Assembly: GCF_000002075.1 (NCBI RefSeq)
Contig: NW_004797284.1
Span: 2,010,327-2,074,326, forward strand
Source: Aplysia californica
Lineage: Eukaryota
Reading direction: 5' to 3'
DNA: 64,000 nucleotides
Made by a program: the position numbers and the translations under genes. Numbering within the stretch: position 1 is the first letter of the stretch; each line of letters begins with the position of its first letter. The notes below the pieces were generated by a model. The model was not told the origin of the DNA. It did not search any database and saw nothing but the letters and a program-made list of their open reading frames with translations. Below are positions 18,772 through 19,415 of the stretch, one piece after another.

Positions 18772-19415
18772 GCGCCTCCTCGGCAAGCCGCTACAACGAA
18801 CTGTACAACTGGGTCAGCGGAAAAGCCTCCCCAGGATTCCCCCAACCCGACGACTCCGGACCCCTGGATGTGGACATGCGTCTGACCAAACTGGACATCG
18901 TTGGTGTGGACAGTGCCAACAACCTGGTCACTTTGATCGCCAGGAGAAGGGTTCTGTGGGCTGACCGTAGTCTGTCCTTCGATGACTCTTTGTACAACGT
19001 GTCATGTGTGTATGCTGCGGCCACCAACATCTGGACTCCTGACAGTACCTTCTACAACTCTGCTAGCCAGGAGCAGGTTTTGAACCGTGAGGTCATCGTA
19101 TTTGCCGGAGGTGAGTTGCTGGAAATTGAAAGAGTCCAGGTGACCATCAACTGTAATGTCAAAGGTGTGAACACCTACACTGGCGCCACCTGCCACCTCC
19201 AACTTGGCTCCTACGGTTTGGGAAATGAGCTGTTCCGTCTGAGAGAGCCCAAGGACAACTGGACCTTCCATCTGGAGTCGGCTTTCAACGGAGCCTCCCC
19301 CTACGAGCTTCTGTCTGGTGACGTCAGCAGATCTGTGGAGCCCTACGCTTCCGGTGACCCCGAGCAGTTCTATTACGATGCCCTGACCTTCACCTTCAGC
19401 TTCAGAAGAAAGTAG
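18772..19415 (+). CDS. Gene B exon 2: AChBP-like domain; CDS join(17661..17703,18772..19415), 228 aa
   Basis: Polypyrimidine tract plus cAG|GC; IWTPD, CNVKGVNTYTGATC, LGSY, YELLS; ends FSFRRK TAG; no TM. Confidence 0.95.

What the first reader, a model, noticed from the sequence alone, without database searches (positions are those of the whole stretch)
18772..19415. ACh pocket rebuilt into a cationic site: candidate soluble binder of anionic or amino-acid ligands
Hand alignment to Aplysia AChBP (mature numbering, from memory, gapless from P28 to W60): loop B W147 is Y (GSY; F in gene A); vicinal C190-C191 is absent and loop C is 2 residues longer (YASGDPEQFYYD); loop D Y55-E56-Q57 is R-R-R in B-G (W-K-R in A); G34 is R in all; Y93 (F in A), Y188 and Y195 are retained. 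Known: W147 makes the key cation-pi contact to ACh, and a loop D Arg at the 57-equivalent plus loop B Tyr/Phe is what GlyR, GABA-A and GluCl use to bind carboxylates. Inference: these proteins should bind ACh/nicotine poorly and may instead bind carboxylate, sulfate or other anionic small molecules, toxins or mineral.
Basis: partly seen in the sequence, partly recalled or inferred. Interest (0 to 1): 0.85.

Follow-up and report, generated by a model that had tools for sequence, protein, structure and literature searches.

The report
Sea-hare AChBP paralogs with arginine-lined pocket
This exon encodes one of eight tandem sea-hare (Aplysia) copies of a secreted acetylcholine-binding-protein relative whose ligand pocket has lost the features needed for acetylcholine and gained arginines like those that amino-acid receptors use, so it probably binds something other than acetylcholine, but what it binds is untested.

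Summary
Window 18772-19415 is exon 2 (whole mature protein plus stop) of a two-exon Aplysia californica gene. It is one of 7 intact paralogs in the window; an 8th lies just outside. Pfam Neur_chan_LBD scores E 2.5e-16, Aplysia AChBP is the best PDB match (E ~1e-22), and the AF2 model has pLDDT 91.5 and TM 0.8-0.88 to AChBP structures.

Computed alignments to the genome's own canonical Ac-AChBP confirm:
- W147 to Y
- no vicinal Cys
- a longer loop C
- Y55-E56-Q57 to R-R-R
- G34 to R
- Y93, Y188 and Y195 kept

The copies are under purifying selection (dN/dS 0.12-0.38). An A. kurodai cDNA ortholog exists ('soluble LGIC-like protein B', apparently unpublished).

- R34 and R57 are older than this clade, and R/K at position 57 is common in nicotinic-type relatives (45/131).
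- R56 should face away from the pocket.
- The protein is acidic overall (pI 4.8) and the loop-C tip carries Asp and Glu.

The pocket therefore looks charge-polarised, as in amino-acid receptors, rather than simply cationic. An engineered Ac-AChBP glycine-binding protein (Q57R plus loop-C replacement) is a direct precedent. I found no evidence on binding, oligomer state or expression. Verdict: a new variant of a known kind.

The parts
17599..17606 (+). TATAAAAG box about 55 bp upstream of the gene B start codon
   Evidence: read directly from the sequence; function inferred
17661..17703 (+). gene B exon 1: signal peptide MARFILLCIALTFA plus first base of a Gly codon, followed by GTGAG donor
   Evidence: identical exon 1 upstream of copies C-G; matches the N-termini of RefSeq and A. 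kurodai proteins
17704..18771 (+). phase-1 intron (GT...AG)
   Evidence: spliced form not seen in reads, inferred from the protein models
18772..19415 (+). gene B exon 2: entire mature AChBP-like domain (214 codons) and TAG stop
18879..18881 (+). Arg at Ac-AChBP position 34 (strand beta1)
   Evidence: also present in all type-II paralogs except C255
18942..18950 (+). loop D Arg-Arg-Arg (Ac positions 55, 56, 57; own residues 58-60)
19005..19007 (+). unpaired extra Cys (Ac position 77), next to the NVS glycosylation sequon
19152..19193 (+). Cys-loop (Cys128 to Cys141, own numbering), retained
19212..19214 (+). loop B Tyr replacing Trp147
19344..19379 (+). loop C YASGDPEQFYYD: no vicinal Cys, 1-3 residues longer, acidic tip
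   Evidence: pLDDT about 71 in the model
19423..19428 (+). AATAAA polyadenylation-type signal just after the stop
   Evidence: read from the sequence; use not shown
516..1157 (-). paralog A exon 2 (50% identical; W-K-R, F147, F93)
24808..25449 (+). paralog C exon 2 (RRR, Y147, loop C tip YLYNAPAQ)
32996..33637 (+). paralog D exon 2
45306..45947 (+). paralog E exon 2
52044..52685 (-). paralog F exon 2
62772..63413 (+). paralog G exon 2

Best explanation
Exon 2 of an intact two-exon Aplysia californica gene for a secreted, soluble Cys-loop ligand-binding-domain protein of the AChBP family. Its A. kurodai ortholog was deposited as 'soluble LGIC-like protein B'. It belongs to an array of eight near-identical tandem genes kept by purifying selection.

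Shown:
- AChBP fold
- signal peptide and no membrane domain
- Cys-loop kept
- loop-B Trp replaced by Tyr
- vicinal loop-C disulfide lost and loop C lengthened
- Arg at both pocket-lining loop-D positions (55 and 57)

Inferred: the protein still forms AChBP-like rings, and its inter-subunit pocket is charge-polarised like those of amino-acid-gated Cys-loop receptors. Guanidinium groups sit on the complementary face, tyrosines on the principal face, and an acidic, mobile loop-C tip caps it. It should therefore bind acetylcholine and nicotine poorly. It more likely acts as an extracellular binder or buffer of a carboxylate-bearing small molecule, zwitterionic (amino-acid-like) rather than purely anionic. 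The ligand, tissue and physiological role are unknown.
For: - Family and fold: pLDDT 91.5; TM 0.80-0.88 to AChBP chains.
- Gene model and secretion signal.
- Residue equivalences against the genome's own Ac-AChBP.
- Functional constraint: 8 intact copies, dN/dS 0.12-0.38. All pocket positions are invariant among B-H and the A. kurodai ortholog, except the loop-C tip of copy C and position 164.
- Rarity: loop-B non-Trp in 9 of 121 and R55 in 3 of 131 relatives. Non-Trp loop B goes mostly with an R57 [Y/F]-F-R loop D, which I read from memory as the GABA/Gly-type motif.
- Ac-AChBP Y55 and Q57 side chains contact ligand. An engineered Q57R puts a guanidinium into the cleft and 'polarises' the site. 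With loop C replaced, that protein co-crystallised with glycine, and variants I and II no longer bound nicotine (PMC6830221).
- GluCl uses two Arg (loop G and loop D) for the two carboxylates. Other GluCls place the second Arg elsewhere, so its position is evolutionarily flexible (PMC5339774).
Against: - No ligand, oligomer or expression data. The homodimer prediction gave no verdict. Two polyA RNA runs had no reads, and the other two runs look like DNA.
- R57 alone is not diagnostic: 45 of 131 relatives have it, mostly with W55 and W147.
- Key amino-acid-receptor features are missing: the principal-face acid at position 145 is Gly, and loop E stays hydrophobic (L116, I118).
- Loop-C Asp/Glu and loop-F Glu could neutralise the arginines.
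- Substitutions on the stem of the B-H clade are not enriched at pocket positions (4/25 against 24/185, p = 0.44).
Confidence: 0.45

Rival explanations
1. The pocket is not a small-molecule site any more. The loop-D arginines form standing inter-subunit salt bridges with the acidic loop-C tip and loop-F Glu. The protein acts through its surfaces or its assembly, for example as a hemolymph or extrapallial di-pentamer like the ACCBP variants that handle calcium carbonate, or as a binder of glycans or other macromolecules.
For: - Loop C carries D and E opposite R55 and R57, and loop F carries E.
- The protein is net acidic, pI 4.8.
- There is a single unpaired Cys next to the N-glycan sequon. A comparable lone Cys in BgAChBP2 is proposed to link pentamers, and ACCBP is a di-pentameric AChBP variant (PMC3423370).
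- C713b shares R55 and the same ASGDPEQF loop C.
Against: - Copy C keeps RRR but has lost both loop-C acids, with 7 nonsynonymous and 0 synonymous changes. The pairing is therefore not obligatory.
- The tyrosine lining (Y93, Y147, Y188, Y195) is strictly kept, which is expected for a ligand cavity.
Confidence: 0.25
2. It is still a binder of cationic amines or alkaloid and imine toxins, a divergent but functional AChBP-type scavenger with altered selectivity. The arginines tune the pocket rather than invert it, as in 5-HT3 and many nicotinic subunits that carry Arg at the 57-equivalent.
For: - R/K at position 57 coexists with W55 and W147 in many nicotinic-type relatives.
- Four of the five aromatic-box positions remain aromatic.
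- Phylogeny places the clade with AChBPs, not with anionic receptors.
- From my own knowledge: 5-HT3A has Arg at this loop-D position yet binds a cation.
Against: - The loop-B Trp that makes the cation-pi contact is lost, and Arg replaces the aromatic residue at 55, adding a second cation in the cleft.
- Engineered Ac-AChBP variants with Q57R (plus Y93A and I118S) lost nicotine binding, although this is confounded by the other changes.
Confidence: 0.2
3. The copies are redundant, decaying duplicates without a specific function, and the pocket changes are drift.
For: - Three copies (B, D, E) carry a TAG four codons before the usual end.
- No RNA reads were found in the two RNA runs laid.
Against: - All eight frames are intact across 214 codons, with dN/dS 0.12-0.38.
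- The motif set is conserved in the A. kurodai cDNA ortholog at 88% identity.
- Splice sites and signal-peptide exons are intact.
Confidence: 0.04

Closest known systems
Aplysia californica AChBP (canonical; L014 in this genome; PDB 2BYN, 2BR7 and many others)
   Same: Same species and the same fold (TM 0.8-0.88). Both are secreted, single-domain, with no membrane part. The Cys-loop and Y93, Y188 and Y195 are kept. The mature part is also encoded by one exon here.
   Different: Only about 31% identical and in a separate, well-supported clade (99/96). It has lost W147 and C190-C191, has R at 34, 55, 56 and 57, and has longer loops C and F.
Engineered glycine-binding protein from Ac-AChBP (PDB 5OAN, 5OBG, 5OBH; PMC6830221)
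   Same: An AChBP scaffold with Arg at position 57 and the vicinal-Cys loop C replaced. The pocket is polarised, with the complementary face positive. Nicotine binding was lost in the precursor variants, and glycine is seen in the site.
   Different: The engineered protein keeps W147 and Y55 and adds G145E, Y93A, I118S and T36F. The natural proteins have Y147 and R55 and keep G145, Y93, I118 and T36.
Orthosteric sites of GlyR, GABA-A and GluCl
   Same: Loop-D Arg at the 57-equivalent (GlyR R65, GluCl R56). Aromatic Tyr/Phe instead of Trp in loop B, followed by Gly (S-Y-G here; the receptor motifs are recalled from memory). GluCl uses two Arg.
   Different: Not a phylogenetic member. No channel domain. 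It lacks the loop-B acid and the polar loop-E residues. The second Arg is at position 55 rather than in loop G or loop A.
ACCBP (Pinctada, Haliotis) and BgAChBP2 (Biomphalaria)
   Same: Natural AChBP-family variants with a non-synaptic role and higher-order, disulfide-linked assemblies. Both have a lone extra Cys near the L3 region.
   Different: According to PMC3423370 those keep the vicinal Cys and an acetylcholine-type site. Their relation to this clade was not tested here.
Aplysia kurodai 'soluble LGIC-like protein B' (BAO57803 / X5I1Z0)
   Same: An ortholog, 88% identical, with an identical pocket motif set.
   Different: A database entry only. No paper was found in the searchable library. 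A related paper cites the lab's A. kurodai CNS cDNAs as 'manuscript in preparation' (PMC4165275).

Membership tests
AChBP family (soluble Cys-loop ligand-binding-domain proteins) | Neur_chan_LBD fold | tested here: met
   Pfam E 2.5e-16; PDB phmmer E ~1e-22; AF2 model pLDDT 91.5 with TM 0.80-0.88 to AChBP chains
AChBP family (soluble Cys-loop ligand-binding-domain proteins) | Secreted, with no transmembrane domain | tested here: met
   Signal-peptide exon 1. The frame stops right after strand beta10.
AChBP family (soluble Cys-loop ligand-binding-domain proteins) | Cys-loop disulfide cysteines | tested here: met
   C128 and C141 (own numbering) align with Ac C127 and C140
AChBP family (soluble Cys-loop ligand-binding-domain proteins) | Homopentameric ring | tested here: inconclusive
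   Complex prediction on two copies gave no verdict. This counts neither for nor against.
Functional acetylcholine/nicotinic binding site | Loop-B Trp (W147) for the cation-pi contact | tested here: not met
   Tyr in B-H and Phe in A. Trp in 112 of 121 aligned relatives.
Functional acetylcholine/nicotinic binding site | Vicinal Cys190-Cys191 in loop C | tested here: not met
   Absent, and loop C is longer
Functional acetylcholine/nicotinic binding site | Aromatic residue at loop-D position 55 | tested here: not met
   Arg in B-H. W, Y or F in 97 of 131 relatives.
Functional acetylcholine/nicotinic binding site | Measured binding of ACh or nicotinic ligands | not testable with these tools
   Needs recombinant protein
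Amino-acid-type orthosteric site (GlyR / GABA-A / GluCl) | Loop-D Arg at the 57-equivalent | tested here: met
   R60 (own numbering) aligns with Ac Q57. Ac Q57 (Q74 in precursor numbering) is equated with the GlyR loop-D Arg in PMC6830221.
Amino-acid-type orthosteric site (GlyR / GABA-A / GluCl) | Loop-B Tyr/Phe instead of Trp | tested here: met
   G-S-Y-G. In relatives, non-Trp loop B goes mostly with a [Y/F]-F-R loop D.
Amino-acid-type orthosteric site (GlyR / GABA-A / GluCl) | Principal-face acid that holds the ligand amine (the 145-equivalent; G162E in the engineered protein) | tested here: not met
   Gly in all copies. Loop-C D and E might substitute, but that is inference.
Amino-acid-type orthosteric site (GlyR / GABA-A / GluCl) | Polar loop-E residue contacting the carboxylate (I118S in the engineered protein; GlyR S129) | tested here: not met
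   L116 and I118 equivalents remain hydrophobic
Amino-acid-type orthosteric site (GlyR / GABA-A / GluCl) | Descent from anionic pLGIC subunits | tested here: not met
   The tree puts the clade beside canonical AChBPs, and the best PDB hits are all AChBPs. Any similarity is convergent.

The most novel reading that the evidence does not exclude
These are natural soluble binding proteins for an amino-acid transmitter or a related carboxylate (glutamate, aspartate, GABA, glycine, taurine-like or a dietary or algal acid). That would make them the amino-acid counterpart of AChBP, arisen by convergent remodelling of an AChBP scaffold. The array of paralogs, including the re-written loop C of copy C, would provide a panel of specificities.
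Probability: 0.2. Interest if true: 0.85.

Novelty: new variant of a known kind. Interest (0 to 1): 0.6.

Why it matters
AChBP was long the main structural surrogate for the ligand-binding site of nicotinic receptors, and its proposed natural role is to buffer transmitter outside cells. No natural soluble counterpart for amino-acid-type sites is known to me. The only one I found is engineered (PMC6830221).

If these Aplysia proteins bind a carboxylate-bearing ligand, three things follow. The AChBP scaffold would have been naturally retargeted. There would be a stable soluble model of an Arg/Tyr pocket. And extracellular buffering of non-cholinergic signals or dietary compounds in molluscs would become a real possibility.

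If they bind nothing, they still mark a sizeable, unstudied, lineage-specific expansion of soluble Cys-loop domains: at least 15 genes in this genome.

Tried and rejected
- Homodimer prediction (complex prediction, 2 copies of exon 2): no verdict (score 0.00, controls not run). It is not evidence either way.
- Expression: the runs holding the sequence behave as DNA. The intron is covered at about 53x in X1, exons are at summed multi-copy depth, and the loose ends at 18764 look like paralog intron sequence. Two polyA RNA runs gave zero reads, and their tissue is unknown. No spliced joint was seen, so splicing rests on the protein models and the A. kurodai cDNA.
All searches used exon 2 by reference.
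- Literature: no paper on these genes, their accessions or 'soluble LGIC-like protein' was found.
- Enrichment of B-H stem substitutions at pocket positions: none (p = 0.44). The cluster of changes along strand beta2 (own residues 57-62) is post hoc.
- G34R as the equivalent of the GluCl loop-G Arg: rejected by strand-pairing inference. The GluCl loop-G Arg contacts the residue at the 55-equivalent, which points to about Ac Q38. In B-H that position is Leu.
- RRR as a proprotein-convertase site: considered unlikely, because it lies inside core strand beta2 of a confident model.
- ESM Atlas look-alikes: only generic Neur_chan_LBD clusters. This added nothing.

Full report
WHAT IS THERE

The window is Aplysia californica (G000 contig C14:2010327-2074326). 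The finding's coordinates are exact. AG at 18770-18771 precedes an open frame of 214 codons that ends at TAG 19413-19415.

A 43-base exon 1 lies upstream (ATG 17661 to 17703). It encodes MARFILLCIALTFA plus one base of a Gly codon, is followed by GTGAG, and is preceded by TATAAAAG at 17599-17606. Together the two exons reproduce the N-termini of the RefSeq and A. kurodai proteins. All searches used exon 2 by reference.

The window holds seven intact copies:
- A: 516-1157, minus strand, 50% identical to B
- B: the finding
- C: 24808-25449
- D: 32996-33637
- E: 45306-45947
- F: 52044-52685, minus strand
- G: 62772-63413

An eighth B-type copy lies 11 kb beyond the window (L005). The genome has at least 15 soluble domains of this kind, each matched as one open stretch without stops. 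These include the canonical Ac-AChBP (L014) and a second canonical copy (L015).

FAMILY

- Pfam Neur_chan_LBD scores E 2.5e-16.
- The best solved relatives are all AChBPs, with Aplysia AChBP at E about 1e-22.
- An AlphaFold2 model built on a 53-sequence alignment has mean pLDDT 91.5 and pTM 0.86.
- It superposes on AChBP chains with TM 0.80-0.88.
- A maximum-likelihood tree places A-H, two C713 genes, a C727 gene, a C255 gene and two metagenomic proteins in one supported clade (99/96), separate from the canonical AChBP clade.
- Outside Aplysia the nearest representative among 1.8 billion proteins is only 37% identical.

CHECKING THE RESIDUE CLAIMS

I took Ac-AChBP from this genome (L014) and verified that numbering from His1 reproduces Y55, Q57, Y93, M116, I118, W147, Y188, C190, C191 and Y195.

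HMMER and MAFFT agree on these equivalences in B-H and in the A. kurodai ortholog:
- G34 to R
- Y55-E56-Q57 to R-R-R
- Q58 to V
- R59 to L
- W60 kept
- D77 to C
- Y93 kept
- M116 to L
- I118 kept
- G145 and S146 kept
- W147 to Y
- V148 to G
- D164 to H
- Y188 kept
- no vicinal Cys

Loop C is longer by 1 residue (HMMER) or 3 (MAFFT). The alternating hydrophobic pattern of strand beta10 favours 3. Loop F is also about 3-4 residues longer than in Ac-AChBP (4 in the MAFFT alignment).

IS IT MORE THAN CHANCE OR DECAY?

All copies are open. Pairwise dN/dS among B-H is 0.12-0.38, with dS 0.11-0.25. Fifty-two of 214 positions vary among B-H, yet none of R34, R55-57, Y93, L116, I118, Y147, Y188 or Y195 does.

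Across 131 relatives:
- Loop B is Trp in 112 of 121 aligned.
- Position 55 is Arg in only 3.
- Loop C has CC in 74.
- The few non-Trp loop-B sequences mostly carry a [Y/F]-F-R loop D, which I read from memory as the GABA/Gly-type motif. I did not identify those proteins.

WHERE THE INTERPRETATION NEEDS TRIMMING

1. History. R34 and a basic 56-57 pair are ancestral to the wider clade:
   - C727: T-R-R with W147
   - A: W-K-R
   - C713: H-K-R and R-K-R
   - C255: W-K-K

   New in B-H are R55 (shared with C713b), E58V and F-to-Y at 147. W147 was already lost in the common ancestor of A, C713 and B-H.

2. R/K at position 57 occurs in 45 of 131 relatives, most of them nicotinic-type with W55 and W147. 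That residue alone does not indicate an anionic ligand.

3. Strand geometry. Residues 52-64 form one strand in the model, so positions 55 and 57 share a face and 56 points the other way. Position 56 is hydrophobic in most relatives. In Ac-AChBP crystal structures the side chains of Y55, Q57 and M116 contact ligand from the complementary subunit. [quoted passage not shown] So two of the three arginines, not all three, should line the pocket.

4. R34 is probably below the classical pocket, next to position 59. In Ac-AChBP position 59 is itself Arg, and here it is Leu. In GluCl the loop-G Arg touches the residue at the 55-equivalent (PMC5339774), which corresponds to about Ac Q38. That position is Leu here. 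This is inference from strand pairing.

5. Charge. The mature protein is acidic (pI 4.8; 18 K+R against 26 D+E). The loop-C tip carries Asp and Glu, and loop F carries Glu. The site is better described as polarised, with a positive complementary face and a negative, mobile principal lid. This is the same wording used for the engineered glycine-binding AChBP. That arrangement fits a zwitterion better than a bare anion.

6. Two features of true amino-acid sites are missing: the principal-face acid (the 145-equivalent stays Gly) and polar loop-E residues.

PRECEDENT

Foldseek surfaced PDB 5OAN, 5OBG and 5OBH. Their paper (PMC6830221) shows the following:
- Ac-AChBP carrying T36F, Q57R, Y93A, I118S and G145E no longer bound nicotine.
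- After its Cys-Cys loop C was also replaced, it co-crystallised with glycine, whose carboxylate was directed at Arg57.

The natural Aplysia proteins share the Q57R-type residue and the loss of the vicinal disulfide. In addition they have the loop-B Trp-to-Tyr change and a second Arg at position 55.

GluCl binds glutamate with two arginines, and different GluCl lineages place the second one in different loops. A second Arg at position 55 is therefore a plausible third solution. This is inference.

MOST LIKELY MECHANISM

A secreted ring of AChBP-like subunits whose interface pocket no longer suits quaternary amines. It more likely binds a carboxylate-bearing, probably zwitterionic, small ligand. 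R58 and R60 (own numbering) would take the acid group, and the Tyr-lined principal face with the acidic loop C would take the amine. I put this at about 0.45.

Rivals:
- A self-latched pocket with a surface or assembly function (0.25). The lone Cys at the D77 position, next to the NVS sequon, recalls the single Cys proposed to join BgAChBP2 pentamers and the di-pentameric ACCBP (PMC3423370).
- A still cation- or toxin-binding AChBP with shifted selectivity (0.2).
- Decay (0.04).

WHAT COULD NOT BE SETTLED

- Oligomer state: one search gave no verdict.
- Expression and tissue: one search gave no RNA support. The only expression evidence is the A. kurodai cDNA entry, whose neighbouring accession is the AChBP that PMC4165275 says came from CNS cDNA.
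- Any ligand.
- No paper on these genes was found.

VERDICT

The functional inference is reasonable but overstated as 'cationic', and it is untested. This is a new variant of a known kind. It is interesting mainly because it may be a natural non-cholinergic AChBP.

Noticed in passing
window 24808-25449 (copy C), loop C codons at about 25384-25401: The loop-C tip of copy C reads YLYNAPAQ instead of YASGDPEQ: 7 nonsynonymous and 0 synonymous substitutions within 6 codons, and it is not a frameshift. Both loop-C acids are removed and a Tyr is added. This suggests either diversifying change at the ligand lid or a short conversion tract from an unseen donor.
   Followed up: partly
window 19005-19007 (B) and the same codon in C-G and L005: B-H and the A. 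kurodai ortholog have a third, unpaired Cys (Ac position 77) directly after the NVS glycosylation sequon. Gene A and the C713 and C727 genes do not. It could link pentamers, as proposed for C71 of BgAChBP2.
   Followed up: partly
window 19413-19415 (B), 33638-33640 (D), 45948-45950 (E): Copies B, D and E end with TAG where C, F, G and H read TGG and continue for WGGQ. This gives a 4-residue shorter C-terminus in three copies.
   Followed up: no
window 26023-26109 and 34493-34567: Short relics similar to the beta9-loopC-beta10 coding part (56-59% identical over 25-29 residues, one with a stop) lie about 600-900 bp downstream of copies C and D. They are probably leftovers of partial duplications.
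   Followed up: no
L008 (G000:C713:71872-72501, minus strand): This 59%-identical paralog combines H-K-R in loop D with a basic loop C (YPRGGPKRFFHD) and F at loop B. Its pocket would be more truly cationic than that of B-H.
   Followed up: no
L012 (G000:C727:35126-35629, minus strand): In this paralog the open frame ends before loop C (193 aa). It is either a pseudogene or a gene with an extra intron.
   Followed up: no
window, 14 runs of N (130-372 bases each) between the copies, e.g. 6940-7114 and 46809-47045: Masked or gap stretches lie in the intergenic spacers.
   Followed up: no
window 17652-17735 and 18744-19415 in run X1: Exon depth in a DNA-like run is 4-10 times the flanking depth of about 53x. 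This is consistent with reads from about 8 near-identical copies piling up, and it supports the copy number independently.
   Followed up: partly
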